64,000 bases of DNA, taken from positions 276,345 to 340,344 of the IMG/VR virus record IMGVR_UViG_3300050120_000152, one strand, 5' to 3'. The translations under genes were made by a program, and so were the position numbers. Shown here piece by piece: positions 42,079 to 64,000 of the stretch. Positions within the stretch are counted from its first letter, which is position 1; the number at the start of each line of letters is the position of its first letter. The notes beneath the pieces are model-generated. The model worked only from the letters and a program-made list of their open reading frames with translations. It did no database searches and was not told where the DNA came from.

Positions 42079-42103
42079 TATTATAAACCTTAGAATACTT
42101 TGG

Positions 42104-42180
42104 GGTAGTTGTGATGGAATGGTAGACATATCGTGCTGTGAACACGATCCTCGTGGGTTCGATTCCCACCTTCTACCCCA
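42104..42180 (+). tRNA. tRNA-His(GTG)
   Basis: TCGTG-CTGTGAA-CACGA arm, G-1/C73, CCA. Two T-T mismatches in the acceptor stem. Confidence 0.85.
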
Positions 42181-42197
42181 AAGTGTTTTAAAAATAT

Positions 42198-42361: not shown

Positions 42362-42436
42362 GGGTTACAAGCATTAATAGTGATGCAGGAGACTCTTAAT
42401 CTTCAGAATAGGGAGCATTACCCTAGTAACCCACCA
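42362..42436 (+). tRNA. tRNA-Lys(CTT), non-canonical D/T loops
   Basis: GGGTTAC/GTAACCC, GGAGA-CTCTTAA-TCTTC, T arm TAGGG-AGCATTA-CCCTA, ACCA. Confidence 0.8.
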
Positions 42437-42441
42437 AATAT

Positions 42442-42517
42442 GGGCATCCTACACTATGGAGTAGGCAATTTTGAAACTCAAGATTGGTATTAGGTTCGAA
42501 TCCTATTATGTCCACCA
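42442..42517 (+). ncRNA. tRNA-like gene with closed, elongated anticodon arm
   Basis: Acceptor, D-like and TTCGAAT arms plus ACCA. Anticodon arm is CAATTTTGA-AAC-TCAAGATTG. Confidence 0.65.
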
Positions 42518-42523
42518 AAATAT

Positions 42524-42599
42524 GGGTCATAAACATTAATACGTGATGTAGGAGTCCTTTAAACTTCAAAACTCGGGGCGGTACCGAGATGACCCACCA
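42524..42599 (+). tRNA. tRNA-Lys(TTT), non-canonical (C33, GGCGGTA T-loop)
   Basis: GGGTCAT/ATGACCC, GGAGT-CCTTTAA-ACTTC, CTCGG-GGCGGTA-CCGAG, ACCA. Confidence 0.75.
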
Positions 42600-42690: not shown

Positions 42691-42816
42691 GGAGCAGAGG
42701 CCAAACGGTTAGGCAATCGGCTGTGGGAAAAGATGTAAAGGCATCCAAAGCTAGTTCAAGTCTAGTATTCCAAAGGTAACCGATGATATAGGGTTCGACT
42801 CCCTACTGCTCCGCCA
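42691..42816 (+). tRNA. tRNA-Asn(GTT) interrupted by a 52-nt anticodon-loop insertion (42725-42776)
   Basis: GGAGCAG/CTGCTCC acceptor, G73, CCA. ATCGG-CTGT[insert]TAA-CCGAT reconstitutes a typical Asn arm. Confidence 0.75.
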
Positions 42817-48280: not shown

Positions 48281-48354
48281 TGGGAATAAATCAAATAGAG
48301 AGATATCTGGCTTTGAACCAGAGTAAGTGGGAGCATTACCCTCATTCCCATCCA
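48281..48354 (+). tRNA. tRNA-Gln(TTG), non-canonical AGCATTA T-loop
   Basis: TGGGAAT/ATTCCCA (T1-A72), TCTGG-CTTTGAA-CCAGA, CCA. Confidence 0.8.
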
Positions 48355-59830: not shown

Positions 59831-60740
59831 TGTATTAGAGCTAGTTAAACAATTATCTCAGAAAGATACCAAGACCCTTTCTCAAAAGGCTTTAAAATTA
59901 GCGAGTGAATGTGGGGAATTAGCTTCGAAAGCATTAGCCTATGACAACCTTGATGGTGATCGTCATCGTTTCATATCGAAGGAAGCTATTCTCGATGAAG
60001 TGGCCGACACTATGCTTGTCGCATTATCGATTGCATATTCATTAGGATATACAGATAGTGATATCTCATCCATGATGAAGGATAAGGCTATCCATTGGTC
60101 ACATCTCAAGGAACAGGACATTTCTGATGGTAATTATCCTTTTGAAATTCATTTTACAGTATTGGCAAAACATTTGGGAGGCTTTATAAAAAATTGTGAA
60201 AAGTGGGGTGATATGAAACCAATTGTTCTTGATTTATATAATCAAGATAGTGGAATAGGTACGCAAGTTACAACATCTACTGTTATATTCGGTACTCTTG
60301 TACAAGCTATATCTAAAATGAATTTTCTTTCAATGAAATTGCGTAATAATGGCTACGAGGTTATTAGAGAAAAAATTGAGACAGTTCCATGGCATCCAGC
60401 TATTGGAAGCATGAATGGAAAATATTTTGAATCGCATATTCCAATATTTTTGGAAAGTAAGGACGTACTTGAAAACTTAAGAAATACGAACATTAACGAT
60501 TTACATATTTCTAAGAATGTATTAAAGCCAGATTTGGATGGTATTAGTAAAATATTTGCTACCATTCGATCAGAAAAGGGTAGTTCTTTAATCAAGCATC
60601 AATTAGTCTTAAACATGAAACTGGCATCATTAGAACTATATGGATTTAAGATGGGTAAAACCATCACTGAATATGCTATTCTAGATTCTAATGAAGAGTT
60701 AGATGCTAGATGGTTAGGTAAAACTATAAATATCATATAA
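59820..60740 (+). CDS. MazG-like domain fused to a His-containing unknown domain
   Basis: KLASECGELA..DEVADTMLVAL, then FEIHFTV..REKIE..YFESH. Confidence 0.7.
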   Translation: MQNDVLELVKQLSQKDTKTLSQKALKLASECGELASKALAYDNLDGDRHRFISKEAILDEVADTMLVALSIAYSLGYTDSDISSMMKDKAIHWSHLKEQDISDGNYPFEIHFTVLAKHLGGFIKNCEKWGDMKPIVLDLYNQDSGIGTQVTTSTVIFGTLVQAISKMNFLSMKLRNNGYEVIREKIETVPWHPAIGSMNGKYFESHIPIFLESKDVLENLRNTNINDLHISKNVLKPDLDGISKIFATIRSEKGSSLIKHQLVLNMKLASLELYGFKMGKTITEYAILDSNEELDARWLGKTINII

Positions 60741-60754
60741 TAAATGATATTAGT

Positions 60755-61132
60755 ATGTTTGATTTAATACAACAATTGAATGAACAATTAGCTGAAGCAT
60801 TAGAGCGTCGAGTTCCTATTGTTAAAGTTACTAGCACGGATGCGCCTACTACAATGGTAATTAAACCAATGACTACTGTAATTGATGTTCAGCACTTGAC
60901 AGATAAGGATGTTGTAGGGCAGAGTATACGTCTGATTAAACAAATTTTGTCACAATATAAAACATCATTTAATTTTAATTTTGAAACTAATGAATCTGGA
61001 TTATTTAATAATTTGATTTTGTCAGCTGAATCAGATGGTAATCCAACAAAATATTTACAATTTGATTTTAATGAACTTACTTCTGATGATATTGCAGGAA
61101 TAAAGAAGCGAATTGGTTCGATTGGGACTTGA
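60755..61132 (+). CDS. Hypothetical protein
   Basis: 125-aa ORF. Confidence 0.55.
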   Translation: MFDLIQQLNEQLAEALERRVPIVKVTSTDAPTTMVIKPMTTVIDVQHLTDKDVVGQSIRLIKQILSQYKTSFNFNFETNESGLFNNLILSAESDGNPTKYLQFDFNELTSDDIAGIKKRIGSIGT

Positions 61133-61170
61133 CAAAAAATATTTGTTTGATAATATAAATAGAATCATAC

Positions 61171-61253
61171 GCTAGGTTGGCTGAGCGGTCGAAAGCACCT
61201 GTTTTGTAATCAGGTATACAACATCGTAGGTTCGAATCCTATGCCTAGCACCA
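61171..61253 (+). tRNA. tRNA-Thr(TGT), enlarged variable loop
   Basis: GCTAGGT/GCCTAGC, loop TTTGTAA, 11-nt variable region, ACCA. Confidence 0.85.
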
Positions 61254-61314
61254 CATTGGTTCAGTTCATAAACACAGCACCATTTATTGTATAAATAAAA
61301 TGAATGGTGCTTAT

Positions 61315-62031
61315 ATGAATATTGAAGATAAAAAGAAAAAGATTGTAAATGAAATAAATGATTTTATAAAAGTGTACCAAAGGTATCCTTCTAAAAATGA
61401 ATATAATAATAGAGATGATTTACCCCACCAAAATACAGTATTAAGAATTATTGGAACTCATTCTGAATACCAATCAAAGGGTATTATTAACCCTAGCCCC
61501 AACCCTATACCTAAACCATCTCACTATTGCATAGCATGTGGAATAGAATTATTAAATAATAGTAATAAATTTTGTAATCGTTCATGTGCGGCATCATTCA
61601 ATAATAAAAAGCGTGACATGGCTTGTAATACTAGGGGTACATGTAAACAATGTTTTGCTACCTTAAGAAATCGTGCTGGTAAATGGTATTGTAGTAAATC
61701 ATGTCATCATGAATATAGATTCTTAGAATTAATAGATAATTGGATAATAGATGGTAATACCACTGGTGATCCTATCACATTAAAAAAGATGATAACCAGA
61801 TTACATGGATATAGCTGTGCTAACGCTACCTGCCAATTATCGGATTGGGATGGTAAATCTATTGTTTTACAATTGGAGCATAAAGATGGTAACAGTGAAA
61901 ATAATAGTGTAACAAATTTATGTTTATTATGTCCTAATTGTCATAGTCAAACATCAACATTTACAGGTAAAAATAGAGGTAATGGTAGACACGTTCGTCG
62001 TCAACGTTATAAAGATGGCAAAAGTTACTAA
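61315..62031 (+). CDS. HNH homing endonuclease with Cys-rich N-terminal modules
   Basis: LQLEHKDGNSENNSVTNLCLLCPNCHSQT. Start probably 61315 (GGTG RBS, TATAAATA at 61290). Confidence 0.88.
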   Translation: MNIEDKKKKIVNEINDFIKVYQRYPSKNEYNNRDDLPHQNTVLRIIGTHSEYQSKGIINPSPNPIPKPSHYCIACGIELLNNSNKFCNRSCAASFNNKKRDMACNTRGTCKQCFATLRNRAGKWYCSKSCHHEYRFLELIDNWIIDGNTTGDPITLKKMITRLHGYSCANATCQLSDWDGKSIVLQLEHKDGNSENNSVTNLCLLCPNCHSQTSTFTGKNRGNGRHVRRQRYKDGKSY

Positions 62032-62041
62032 ATAAAATTAT

Positions 62042-62124
62042 GCTGGATTGGCTGAAGGGTTGAAAGCGCCTGTTTCGTATACAGGAATACCACATTGCAG
62101 GTTCGAATCCTGTGTCCAGCACCA
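62042..62124 (+). tRNA. tRNA-Thr(CGT), enlarged variable loop
   Basis: GCTGGAT/GTCCAGC, CCTGT-TTCGTAT-ACAGG, 11-nt variable region, ACCA. Confidence 0.85.
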
Positions 62125-62130
62125 TCATAT

Positions 62131-62232
62131 ATCAGCTTAACTTAAAGAAGTATTAGGTAAAGCGTACATCCCGATAGTTAGTACCCGCTTAAACCTAATG
62201 GTACAAAGCTAACTATAAGCAGTTAGGCTGAT
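62131..62232 (+). ncRNA. Unassigned pseudoknotted RNA candidate
   Basis: 12-bp closing stem, nested stems and a 9-bp loop-to-3' pairing. Confidence 0.6.
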
Positions 62233-62291
62233 TATTCATTTGACATTCAGATTATAATCTGATATCTTGTCTCTATAACAGAGGAAAAATT

Positions 62292-63023
62292 ATGACAAAA
62301 CCTAAAGACAAAAAAGTATTCAATTTAGAATTACCTGATAATTTATCAAAAGATCAATTGAATGACTTGCTTTCCGAAGTGAAAGCCAAAATAAAAGAAA
62401 AAAGTTTATCAAGCACTGACATTCATATCACTTGTATATTAGATATTTCTGGATCAATGAGTTCTATCAGAGACGATTCCATAGGTGGCTTCAATACCTT
62501 CATTCAGGAACAGAAAGAATCAAAAGATGGTGACGCATTTTTAACTGTTCATTTATTTGATGATAAATTTGAAACTTTATATGAAAATGTTCCTATTGCA
62601 AATGTTAAACCATTAACCAGAGATGATTTTGTTCCTCGTGGTAGTACAGCATTAACAGATGCATTGGGCAAGACATTAATGCAGTTATTAAAGACCGATA
62701 ATAAAAATAATATTATTGTTATTCTTACTGATGGTGGCGAAAATTCTTCAAAAACTTTTACTACACATGATGTTAAGAAATTAACCATGCGATGCGAAGA
62801 AAAGAATTGGCAGTTTGTCTATTTGGGTGCAAATCAAGATTCATTTGGTGTTACACAGCATTATGGTATGTTAGGCGCACATACAGCAAATTATGTTGCA
62901 GATAGTGCGGGTACTAGAACAGCGTATGCATCAGCTTCAAATTATACAAAAATGACACGATCCAAGATGGCAGCAACGGATACTTCAGCAGGAATGTCAG
63001 ACAAAACAGCGAAAGCGTCGTAA
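62292..63023 (+). CDS. vWA domain protein
   Basis: ILDISGSM, PRGSTALTDA, ILTDGGENSS and YLGAN motifs. Confidence 0.88.
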   Translation: MTKPKDKKVFNLELPDNLSKDQLNDLLSEVKAKIKEKSLSSTDIHITCILDISGSMSSIRDDSIGGFNTFIQEQKESKDGDAFLTVHLFDDKFETLYENVPIANVKPLTRDDFVPRGSTALTDALGKTLMQLLKTDNKNNIIVILTDGGENSSKTFTTHDVKKLTMRCEEKNWQFVYLGANQDSFGVTQHYGMLGAHTANYVADSAGTRTAYASASNYTKMTRSKMAATDTSAGMSDKTAKAS

Positions 63024-63071
63024 ATCAAAAATCCCCTCAAAACTGAGGGGATTTTCTTATGGAGGTATATA

Positions 63072-63316
63072 ATGGGTTATCATAAAGCAAAAATTAAGAA
63101 AGGAATGTTAGGTGAATTATCTAAAATACAAGAAGAATTGGATGAAGTCAAAGATGCTATGGATCAAAACGCATTCATTATGGCTTTGGTTGAGTTATCT
63201 GATTTGTATGGTGCTGTGGAGTGTTATTTGAAGCGTAATTTTAGAGGAATGACAATGGGTGATCTTAAAATCATGTCAGACTTAACCAAATCAGCCTTTT
63301 TAGATGGAGAGCGATA

Positions 63317-63317
<1 letters not shown>
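63072..63317 (+). CDS. Small MazG-like protein
   Basis: SKIQEELDEVKDA..VELSDLYGA. Confidence 0.65.

Positions 63318-64000
<683 letters not shown>

What the first reader, a model, noticed from the sequence alone, without database searches (positions are those of the whole stretch)
62131..62232. Compact pseudoknotted RNA immediately 3' of tRNA-Thr(CGT)
P1 ATCAGCTTAACT/AGTTAGGCTGAT (12 bp), P2 TATTAGGT/ACCTAATG, P3 AAGCG/CGCTT, and the apical ATAGTTAGT (62174-82) pairs with GCTAACTAT (62208-16). This much nested plus crossing pairing in about 100 nt is typical of ribozymes or protein-binding sRNAs. It starts 6 nt after the tRNA CCA and ends before the next TTGACA. I do not recognise the family.
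Basis: partly seen in the sequence, partly recalled or inferred. Interest (0 to 1): 0.6.

Follow-up and report, generated by a model that had tools for sequence, protein, structure and literature searches.

The report
Orphan pseudoknotted RNA behind phage tRNA-Thr
A 102-base stretch just after a threonine tRNA gene in a 340-kb "jumbo" phage from peat is a real, tightly folded and very strongly conserved non-coding RNA that matches no known RNA family; what it does is still unknown.

Summary
All four helices are at the stated coordinates, 6 nt after tRNA-Thr(CGT) and 7 nt before a TTGACA promoter.

I found one homologue, in a related phage contig (L010), at the same position. It differs from the window as a folded RNA should:
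- P1 keeps pairing through two A-U to G-C double changes.
- The crossing helix keeps pairing through one U-A to C-G double change.
- The 66-nt core is 95.5% identical, against 53% at third codon positions of the next gene and 63% for the adjacent tRNA.

G·U pairs and folding energy favour the + strand. No ORF, tandem repeat or terminator is present, and there is one copy per genome.

Rfam gives no match even at E≤10. There is no HDV-like or theta fold and no cloverleaf. Three to four syntenic relatives lack the element, so it is a lineage-specific insertion of about 102 nt into a roughly 13-nt spacer.

Best reading (confidence 0.45): a small RNA gene riding on the tRNA operon, cut out by host tRNA-processing nucleases and acting through its invariant pseudoknotted core on an unidentified partner. 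A new self-cleaving ribozyme is possible but untested.

Only two lineages are known, so covariation support is thin and nothing shows expression.

The parts
61129..61156 (+). Sigma-70-like promoter (TTGACA-16-TAATAT, TG-extended). It probably drives tRNA-Thr(TGT), the HNH gene, tRNA-Thr(CGT) and the element.
   Evidence: a homologous promoter precedes the tRNAs in L010. Consensus match only; transcription is inferred.
61171..61253 (+). tRNA-Thr(TGT), 83 nt with a long variable region
61300..62031 (+). Free-standing HNH homing-endonuclease gene lying between the two tRNA-Thr genes
   Evidence: PHROG HNH endonuclease families at E 6e-22. Homologues sit at the same place in L010 and L002.
62042..62124 (+). 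tRNA-Thr(CGT), 83 nt, with CCA encoded
62125..62130 (+). 6-nt A/U-rich single-stranded spacer (UCAUAU); proposed endonuclease entry site
   Evidence: Sequence. A 6-nt spacer is also present in L010. The cleavage itself is inferred.
62131..62142 (+). P1 5' strand
   Evidence: Pairs with 62221-62232. Two double compensatory changes and two single-sided G-C/G·U changes relative to L010.
62143..62150 (+). J1/2 junction. The first 3-4 nt vary and the last four (GAAG) are invariant.
62151..62158 (+). P2 5' strand
   Evidence: Pairs with 62193-62200. Invariant except that the innermost pair is U-A here and A/A in L010. Recovered by RNAalifold.
62160..62164 (+). P3 5' strand
   Evidence: Pairs with 62186-62190 and is invariant. 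MFE and RNAalifold prefer a variant that also pairs GUAC 62164-67 with GUAC 62181-84.
62165..62173 (+). Invariant C-rich loop segment (UACAUCCCG), unpaired in every model; candidate partner-binding surface
   Evidence: the binding role is inferred
62174..62182 (+). 5' strand of the crossing (pseudoknot) helix
   Evidence: 9 bp with 62208-62216. U62175-A62214 becomes C-G in L010. Duplex energy is -8.4 kcal/mol here and -10.3 in L010.
62186..62190 (+). P3 3' strand
62193..62200 (+). P2 3' strand
62201..62207 (+). Invariant A-rich linker (GUACAAA) between P2 and the pseudoknot 3' strand
   Evidence: That it spans the P2-P3 stack is inferred from H-type pseudoknot geometry.
62208..62216 (+). 3' strand of the crossing (pseudoknot) helix
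62221..62232 (+). P1 3' strand
62240..62268 (+). Sigma-70-like promoter (TTGACA-17-TATCTT, TG-extended) of the next operon. It lies outside the RNA and marks its 3' limit.
   Evidence: TTGACA-17-TATATT sits at the same place in L010
62292..63023 (+). VWA-domain protein gene, used as the synteny anchor. It is followed by a perfect 12-bp hairpin at 63028-63055, the first terminator-like structure downstream.
   Evidence: the hairpin is inverted repeat I18

Best explanation
The element is a gene for a small structured non-coding RNA of about 102 nt. It entered the short spacer between the last tRNA of a phage tRNA-Thr/HNH transcription unit and the next promoter.

Fold. The RNA forms an H-type pseudoknot: the P2-P3 stack, with its loop pairing to the downstream strand. 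A 12-bp P1 helix made from its own 5' and 3' ends clamps it shut.

Proposed working (inferred, not shown):
1. It is transcribed from the sigma-70-like promoter at 61129 together with the tRNAs.
2. Host tRNA-processing endonucleases cut in the A/U-rich single-stranded spacers on either side, as happens with RNase E or RNase P/Z in tRNA operons.
3. The released RNA is stable because both ends are locked in P1.
4. It acts in trans through its sequence-invariant core, in particular the unpaired C-rich loop UACAUCCCG and the A-rich linker GUACAAA.
5. The partner is unidentified. A host or phage protein is the most likely candidate, for example a factor of translation, RNA processing or anti-phage defence.
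For: Real structure, with the + strand favoured:
- Searches show the helices and the strand asymmetry. The U·G pairs would be A/C mismatches on the other strand.
- RNAalifold recovers P1, P2 and P3 independently.

Homologue at the same position in L010:
- Two double compensatory changes in P1 and one in the crossing helix.
- Within 62159-62216 the only two substitutions are the two partners of one predicted pseudoknot pair.

Selection on sequence:
- The core is 63/66 identical.
- By comparison: 62.8% for the neighbouring tRNA, 56.5% for the promoter/leader, 70.6% for the VWA gene and 53% at its third codon positions.
- The probability of 3 or fewer differences at the third-position rate is about 1e-14.
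- The outer parts of the same element are only 62-65% identical, so recent transfer does not explain the conserved core.

Non-coding and not repetitive:
- No frame is open for more than 23 codons.
- No tandem repeat. One copy per genome.

Transcription context:
- A promoter lies before the tRNAs and another directly after the element. There is no terminator-like site between them.
- All neighbouring genes are on the + strand.

Insertion:
- Syntenic relatives L002/L019, L014 and L017 go from tRNA-Thr(CGT) to the promoter in 9-13 nt, or 53 nt to the VWA start.
- The tRNA operon is therefore a permissive landing place rather than something that needs the element.

Precedents, from my own knowledge and not tested here:
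- Phage T4 encodes stable 'species 1 and 2' RNAs (rnaC, rnaD) inside its tRNA cluster.
- The E. coli 3'ETS-leuZ is a functional RNA cut from a tRNA operon trailer.
Against: - No RNA data exist. No public RNA run holds the sequence, so transcription, processing and stability are all inferred.
- Only two lineages are known, so covariation rests on three pairs.
- No partner was identified. No complement of 13 nt or more exists elsewhere in the phage genome, there is no TROVE/Ro or RtcB gene, and the host is unknown.
- The invariance of the helices P2, P3 and PK goes beyond what folding alone needs. It could equally fit a catalytic core, a ligand pocket or alternative conformers.
Confidence: 0.45

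Rival explanations
1. A self-cleaving ribozyme of a new class. It would cut the primary transcript next to the tRNA, helping to free the tRNA-Thr(CGT) 3' end or separating the tRNA transcript from downstream RNA.
For: - The element sits 6 nt after the CCA.
- Phage tRNAs are known to be followed by small ribozymes: theta ribozymes lie within +/-5 nt of the tRNA end (PMC10879173).
- The fold is compact and pseudoknotted, with an invariant core and a variable, covarying outer helix.
- The strand order A-B-C-D-C'-B'-D'-A' is that of twister's P1/P2/P4/T1. This is my own comparison, made from memory of the twister fold.
Against: - No Rfam ribozyme model matches at E<=10: HDV-like, twister, twister-sister, pistol, hatchet, hammerhead.
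- No nested double pseudoknot can be threaded in either homologue.
- Relatives without the element carry the same tRNA with a 9-13-nt trailer, so the tRNA does not need it.
- Only HDV-like and hatchet folds cut at their own 5' edge. A cut inside J1/2 would leave an 18-20-nt trailer on the tRNA.
Confidence: 0.15
2. A cis-acting 3'-end module of the tRNA transcript. The stable fold would block 3'-to-5' exonucleases or position an endonuclease, protecting or maturing the upstream tRNA and HNH RNA, with no function of its own in trans.
For: - It is the last structured feature of the transcription unit, and no terminator follows before the next promoter.
- The fold is strong: about -23.5 kcal/mol nested plus -8.4 for the pseudoknot duplex.
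Against: - A generic roadblock needs structure, not sequence. Yet 63 of 66 core positions, loops included, are invariant, while P1 drifts freely with compensation.
- Relatives do without it.
Confidence: 0.15
3. A ligand- or protein-sensing leader (riboswitch-like aptamer or autoregulatory operator). It would act on read-through transcripts into the downstream operon of VWA, an 82-aa protein and a class-II aaRS-like protein.
For: - A P1-closed domain with a pseudoknot between a hairpin loop and the 3' junction is a common aptamer layout. THF-I and SAM-I have this feature (my own knowledge).
- No terminator separates it from the VWA gene.
- The third gene of the operon weakly resembles a class II aminoacyl-tRNA synthetase core.
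Against: - A promoter lies between the element and the gene in both phages.
- In L010 an unrelated 80-aa ORF is interposed.
- There is no expression platform: no terminator or RBS-sequestering helix.
- More than 160 loci with the same operon lack the element.
- No known riboswitch class matches.
Confidence: 0.08
4. A DNA-level element rather than an RNA. It could be a miniature inverted-repeat mobile element with P1 as terminal inverted repeats, or a cluster of protein-binding inverted repeats upstream of the 62240 promoter.
For: - It behaves as an insertion of about 102 bp with 12-bp terminal inverted repeats in an otherwise roughly 13-bp spacer.
- It ends 7 bp from the -35 hexamer.
Against: - There is one copy in the 340-kb genome and none in 13 other phage records.
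- The arms contain U·G positions that are mismatches in duplex or minus-strand DNA, and the strand asymmetry of folding is clear.
- Four interleaved repeats that covary fit a folded single strand better than operator sites.
- No transposase gene is nearby.
Confidence: 0.07

Closest known systems
Theta ribozymes (minimal HDV-like ribozymes next to phage tRNAs; PMC10879173)
   Same: A small pseudoknotted RNA on the same strand directly 3' of a phage tRNA gene, in a Caudoviricetes genome rich in tRNAs.
   Different: - Theta ribozymes are P4-less HDV-like nested double pseudoknots within +/-5 nt of the tRNA end.
- Here the strand order is a P1-clamped H-type pseudoknot, and no HDV-like threading exists.
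- No HDV-family model matches.
- The element is about twice as long and begins 6 nt after the CCA.
- Cleavage is untested.
Phage T4 stable 'species 1 and 2' RNAs (rnaC/rnaD) in the tRNA cluster (my own knowledge)
   Same: A non-tRNA small RNA gene embedded in a phage tRNA transcription unit. Its termini are paired, it is presumably released by tRNA-processing enzymes, and its function is unknown.
   Different: - There is no sequence similarity to any cultured phage, T4-like phages included.
- The T4 RNAs are not described as pseudoknots.
- Processing here is only inferred.
3'ETS-leuZ of E. coli (functional RNA cut from a tRNA operon trailer; my own knowledge)
   Same: A functional RNA derived from the 3' trailer of the last tRNA of an operon, proposed to be released by endonuclease cleavage.
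   Different: - 3'ETS-leuZ is an Hfq-dependent sponge that includes the intrinsic terminator.
- This element has no terminator or U-tract.
- No complementary target was found in the phage genome.
Twister ribozyme / THF-I riboswitch (fold topology only)
   Same: An outer helix formed by the two ends, an inner hairpin, and a pseudoknot between that hairpin's loop and the 3'-side junction strand.
   Different: - None of their conserved nucleotides is present, and neither Rfam model matches at E<=10.
- The pseudoknot is 9 bp here, against 2-4 bp in twister.
- There is no second pseudoknot and no three-way junction.
- The resemblance is recalled from memory and is only a lead.

Membership tests
Theta / HDV-like ribozymes | Nested double pseudoknot (P1, P1.1, P2, P3) with the cleavage site at the 5' end of P1 | tested here: not met
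   A descriptor scan over the tRNA end to the promoter found 0 candidates in both homologues. No HDV-family Rfam hit at E<=10.
Theta / HDV-like ribozymes | Lies within about 5 nt of a viral tRNA 3' end, on the same strand | tested here: inconclusive
   It starts 6 nt after the CCA in both phages. The position is close to the criterion in PMC10879173, but the fold differs.
Any self-cleaving ribozyme | Site-specific self-scission | not testable with these tools
   Needs in-vitro transcription. No RNA reads are available.
Twister, twister-sister, pistol, hatchet, hammerhead | Match to the family covariance model or its conserved core nucleotides | tested here: not met
   cmscan of the element alone gave zero matches at E<=10 in the window and in L010.
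Intrinsic (Rho-independent) terminator | G+C-rich hairpin with a short loop followed by a U-tract | tested here: not met
   0 terminator-like sites in 60700-63200. P1 encloses 78 nt and is followed by UAUUCAUUU.
tRNA / tRNA-like gene | Cloverleaf with T-loop and 3' CCA | tested here: not met
   Not called by ARAGORN or by the Rfam tRNA model even at E<=10. There is no CCA after P1 and the nested fold is not a four-way junction.
Bacterial Y RNA (YrlA-like) | Rfam Y-RNA-type match and a Ro/Rsr (TROVE) protein partner | tested here: not met
   No Rfam hit. No TROVE domain in the 340-kb genome, with positive controls responding. The neighbouring VWA protein is generic.
Known riboswitch classes | Aptamer model match plus an expression platform directly upstream of the regulated gene | tested here: not met
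   No Rfam hit. A promoter intervenes and there is no terminator or RBS-sequestering helix. The downstream gene differs between the two phages.
MITE-like mobile DNA | Multiple dispersed copies with terminal inverted repeats and target-site duplication | tested here: not met
   Single copy in its own genome. Absent from 13 other phage records and 160 loci. The flanks are too A/T-rich to judge a duplication.
Type III antitoxin RNA (ToxI-like) or pseudo-antitoxin | Tandem repeats of about 34-45 nt | tested here: not met
   No tandem repeat at score 30 or more.
T4 species 1/2-type stable RNAs of tRNA clusters | Non-tRNA RNA gene inside a phage tRNA transcription unit | tested here: met
   Position and strand. 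This is a resemblance of kind only: there is no sequence similarity to cultured phages.
T4 species 1/2-type stable RNAs of tRNA clusters | Accumulates as a discrete, stable processed RNA | not testable with these tools
   No RNA run holds the sequence.

The most novel reading that the evidence does not exclude
The element founds a new class of small functional RNA whose invariant pseudoknotted core is a catalytic or ligand-binding site. One form would be a new self-cleaving ribozyme tied to phage tRNA maturation. Another would be an aptamer or decoy that a jumbo phage deploys from its tRNA operon against a host factor.
Probability: 0.2. Interest if true: 0.8.

Novelty: new variant of a known kind. 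Interest (0 to 1): 0.5.

Why it matters
Phage tRNA clusters are increasingly seen as more than codon-usage aids. They escape host anticodon nucleases, and they carry ribozymes that mature suppressor tRNAs. A second, unrelated kind of pseudoknotted RNA attached to a phage tRNA would add to that picture.

The core is better conserved than the tRNA beside it, which implies a sequence-specific job. That job could be catalysis, ligand binding or capture of a protein. The RNA is only about 100 nt, so it is cheap to test by in-vitro transcription, structure probing and pull-down.

It also shows that a tRNA operon can serve as a landing pad where a small RNA gene gains transcription and processing at no extra cost.

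The limits are real. Only two lineages are known, there are no expression data and the host is unknown. At present it is a well-supported candidate, not a characterised system.

Tried and rejected
Searches for more homologues, all negative apart from L010:
- Exact or IUPAC pattern scans in IMG/VR with five different patterns (and the tRNA anchor), in JGI metagenomes and in GTDB genomes.
- blastn of the element against cultured phages, plasmids and E. coli genomes gave only chance hits.
- The covariance model R1 was run on loci L002-L017, on 160 VWA-anchored loci, on L179 and L180, and on 13 whole phage records, 10 of them complete or nearly complete jumbo phages. The weak hits were rejected on inspection: L174 at E 0.83, L165 at E 4, and L180 at E 0.04, which lies inside a coding region and lacks P1.
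- Protein-anchored look-ups through the VWA, the 125-aa and the HNH neighbours gave L010 only.
- The sequencing-run index found the window's own type in two peat runs and the L010 type in a third run. There was no third variant and no RNA run.

Ideas tested and dropped:
- Ordinary terminator.
- Small ORF.
- tRNA or tRNA-like gene.
- HDV-like or theta ribozyme.
- Y RNA with a Ro partner.
- Antisense RNA to another phage transcript.
- Tandem-repeat antitoxin mimic.
- Multi-copy mobile element.
- A cluster of other 12-bp closing helices at 35.5-37.5 kb, which lies in coding sequence without shared repeats and is chance.
- An obligatory link to the HNH gene: L002 has the HNH gene but no element.
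- An obligatory link to the VWA gene: L012, L014, L017 and 160 further loci lack the element.

Not used or not encountered:
- The large representative-protein search and the structure and complex predictors were not used. The question is about an RNA, and the family scans left no claim resting on them.
- Read laying was given 601 letters.

Full report
**Where it lies.** The window is the last 64 kb of a 340,344-bp IMG/VR virus record with direct terminal repeats, judged complete. The record has 34.7% G+C. It carries about 39 tRNA genes plus a tmRNA-like call and a CCA-adding-enzyme-like ORF. Sequencing runs that hold the sequence are peat metagenomes. Its proteins relate only distantly, at 35-39% identity, to XacN1-type jumbo phages. 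The genes around the finding are all on the + strand, in this order:
- a sigma-70-like promoter at 61129
- tRNA-Thr(TGT) at 61171-61253
- an HNH homing-endonuclease gene at 61300-62031
- tRNA-Thr(CGT) at 62042-62124
- the element at 62131-62232
- a second sigma-70-like promoter at 62240
- a VWA-domain gene at 62292-63023
- a perfect 12-bp hairpin at 63028-63055

**The observation.**
- P1 is 12 bp, P2 is 8 bp, P3 is 5 bp, and a 9-bp helix crosses them. It joins the P3 loop (62174-62182) to the strand between P2 and P1 (62208-62216).
- Three of the helices contain a U·G pair.
- The + strand folds to -28.2 kcal/mol, z = -3.3. The reverse complement reaches only z = -1.5.
- A 9-bp complement between the two pseudoknot segments appears in 0.27% of shuffles.
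- P1 taken alone is not unusual in this A/T-rich DNA.
- There is no ORF of more than 23 codons, no tandem repeat, no terminator-like site and no second copy in the genome.

**The homologue.** Through the VWA neighbour I reached a 67-kb ENA contig (L010) whose VWA protein is 76% identical. It has the same gene order, and directly after its own tRNA-Thr(CGT), again after a 6-nt spacer and just before TTGACA, it has a 102-nt homologue. The comparison is informative because the surrounding DNA has diverged a good deal.

| Region | Identity, window vs L010 |
|---|---|
| VWA gene | 70.6% |
| VWA third codon positions | 53% |
| Promoter/leader | 56.5% |
| tRNA-Thr(CGT) (a different 77-nt version in L010) | 62.8% |
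| Element: P1 and its junctions | 62-65% |
| Element: core 62151-62216 | 63/66 (95.5%) |

- In P1, two A-U pairs have become G-C, two pairs switch between G-C and G·U, and two pairs are lost.
- Of the three core differences, two are the partners of one predicted pair of the crossing helix, U-A becoming C-G. The third opens the innermost pair of P2.
- Pairing is kept in 95.6% of cells, against 22-43% when the 3' partners are slid by one to three columns.
- RNAalifold recovers P1, P2 and P3 on its own.
- In L010 the nested-only MFE forms the crossing helix in place of P2-P3. That is what one expects if both helices are real and can coexist only as a pseudoknot.
- The diverged outer shell rules out recent transfer as the reason for the conserved core.
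- With only two sequences the formal shuffle control is weak (58/500). I treat the structure as well supported rather than proven.

**Distribution.** The window's own type occurs in two peat runs and the L010 type in a third data set. I found no third variant in any search listed under Tried and rejected. Syntenic relatives lack the element:
- In L002/L019, which also has the HNH gene, 9 nt separate the tRNA from TTGACA.
- In L014 the distance is 13 nt.
- In L017 only 53 nt separate the tRNA from the VWA start.

Removing the element from the window leaves a 13-nt spacer. The simplest history is a single insertion of about 102 nt in the common ancestor of the two carriers. The element is tied neither to the HNH gene nor to the VWA gene.

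**What it is not.**
- Rfam 15 gives nothing at gathering thresholds and nothing at E≤10, even when only the element is searched so that filters are most permissive. That covers HDV-like, twister, twister-sister, pistol, hatchet and hammerhead ribozymes, all riboswitch classes, Y RNAs, 5S rRNA, tmRNA and tRNA.
- Theta ribozymes are the known small RNAs directly behind phage tRNAs, and they are P4-less HDV-like double pseudoknots (PMC10879173). A descriptor for that fold finds no threading in either homologue.
- The genome has no Ro/TROVE or RtcB gene, and the neighbouring VWA protein is generic.
- No other place in the phage genome is complementary to the element beyond chance.

**How it most likely works.** The following is shown:
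- It is a folded, strand-specific, non-coding element under strong sequence-level selection.
- It sits at the end of a tRNA transcription unit with no terminator before the next promoter.

The following is inferred:
- It is transcribed with the tRNAs from the promoter at 61129.
- It is released by the nucleases that cut tRNA precursors in the A/U-rich single-stranded spacers on either side.
- P1 protects both of its ends.

The fold is an H-type pseudoknot:
- stem 1 is P2-P3
- loop 1 is UACAUCCCG
- stem 2 is the crossing helix
- loop 3 is GUACAAA
- P1 clamps the whole fold

The loop lengths are sterically adequate by the usual rules for such pseudoknots; this is inference.

P2, P3 and the crossing helix are almost invariant in sequence while P1 drifts with compensation. 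The core therefore does something that depends on its sequence: binding a protein or small molecule, or catalysis. I rank the readings as follows.

| Reading | Confidence |
|---|---|
| Processed, trans-acting RNA with an unidentified partner | 0.45 |
| New self-cleaving ribozyme | 0.15 |
| Cis-acting 3'-end protection or processing module | 0.15 |
| Leader or aptamer for the downstream operon | 0.08 |
| DNA-level element | 0.07 |

Precedents for RNAs that ride on tRNA operons are the T4 species 1/2 RNAs and the E. coli 3'ETS-leuZ. Both are cited from my own knowledge, not tested here.

**Verdict.** It is an orphan RNA family with two known members, of a known general kind (a small RNA attached to a phage tRNA cluster) but with a fold and sequence not seen before. 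Interest is moderate. It would rise sharply if cleavage or a specific partner were demonstrated. It is held down by the two-sequence alignment and the absence of any expression data.

Noticed in passing
window 42362-42436, 42442-42517, 42524-42599: The 250-nt gap between tRNA-Phe and tRNA-Lys folds (z = -3.7) into three consecutive cloverleaf-like units. Each ends in CCACCA and they are separated by AAATAT-like spacers. ARAGORN and Rfam do not call them; the first scores 22 bits against a gathering score of 29. Two have odd D arms and T-loops (AGCAUUA, GGCGGUA) and anticodon loops that would read CUU and UUU (Lys). They may be non-canonical or decoy tRNAs.
   Followed up: partly
window 42691-42816: A 126-nt sequence has a tRNA-like acceptor stem, a canonical T arm (GGGTTCGACTCCC) and a 3' GCCA, but about 55 extra nt in the anticodon or variable region. 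No tool calls it. It could be a tRNA with an insert or a tRNA-like RNA.
   Followed up: no
window 48282-48354: Another uncalled tRNA-like cloverleaf ending in CCA, with the same unusual T arm (GGGAGCATTACCC) and an anticodon loop reading UUG (Gln). It lies at the end of the 296-nt gap before tRNA-Thr(GGT).
   Followed up: no
window 61171-61253 and 62042-62124: Both tRNA-Thr genes flanking the HNH gene are 83 nt long, with an 11-nt variable region. They resemble the tRNA-Thr of T5-like phages (about 78% identity). The related phage L010 has ordinary 77-nt tRNA-Thr genes at the same places (62.8% identity), so the tRNAs have been exchanged or have diverged much faster than the RNA element beside them.
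   Followed up: partly
window 62292-64000; L010 5001-6740; loci L019-L178: A conserved trio sits immediately downstream of tRNA clusters (Thr, or Lys/Tyr) in many jumbo-phage contigs; 49 of 160 loci have tRNAs within 2.5 kb. The trio is a VWA protein, a protein of about 82 aa (phrog_6408) and a protein of about 230 aa with weak similarity to class II aminoacyl-tRNA-synthetase cores (PHROG 'histidyl tRNA synthetase' E 7e-24; PylRS/PheS motif region at E 0.002-0.1). This suggests a tRNA-related function for the module.
   Followed up: partly
G000:C1:89769-90200 and 77544-77903 (outside the window): ARAGORN calls a permuted tmRNA-like gene (tag ASNDAIYSMEYSLAA), and a 404-aa ORF carries a CCA-adding-enzyme/poly(A)-polymerase domain (74 bits). 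With about 39 tRNAs, the phage invests heavily in translation.
   Followed up: no
L002 2400-2490 (- strand): In the relative that lacks the element, two direct repeats of about 29 nt (AAATCAAACATTTTG...), each with an internal palindrome, lie between the HNH stop codon and tRNA-Thr(CGT). They may be operator or endonuclease-related sites.
   Followed up: no
window 42090-42191: A long inverted repeat (12 bp or more, extendable) brackets tRNA-His (42105-42180). It may form a precursor stem around the first tRNA of the array.
   Followed up: no
L004 871-970 and L005 5253-5330: In unrelated phage contigs that share the 3' half of this tRNA-Thr, the tRNA is followed by other non-tRNA stretches of about 80-100 nt with end-to-end complementarity (for example TTCCAG...CTGGAA in L004/L009). 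Neither Rfam nor model R1 matches them. tRNA-trailing structured RNAs may be more common in phages than is annotated.
   Followed up: no
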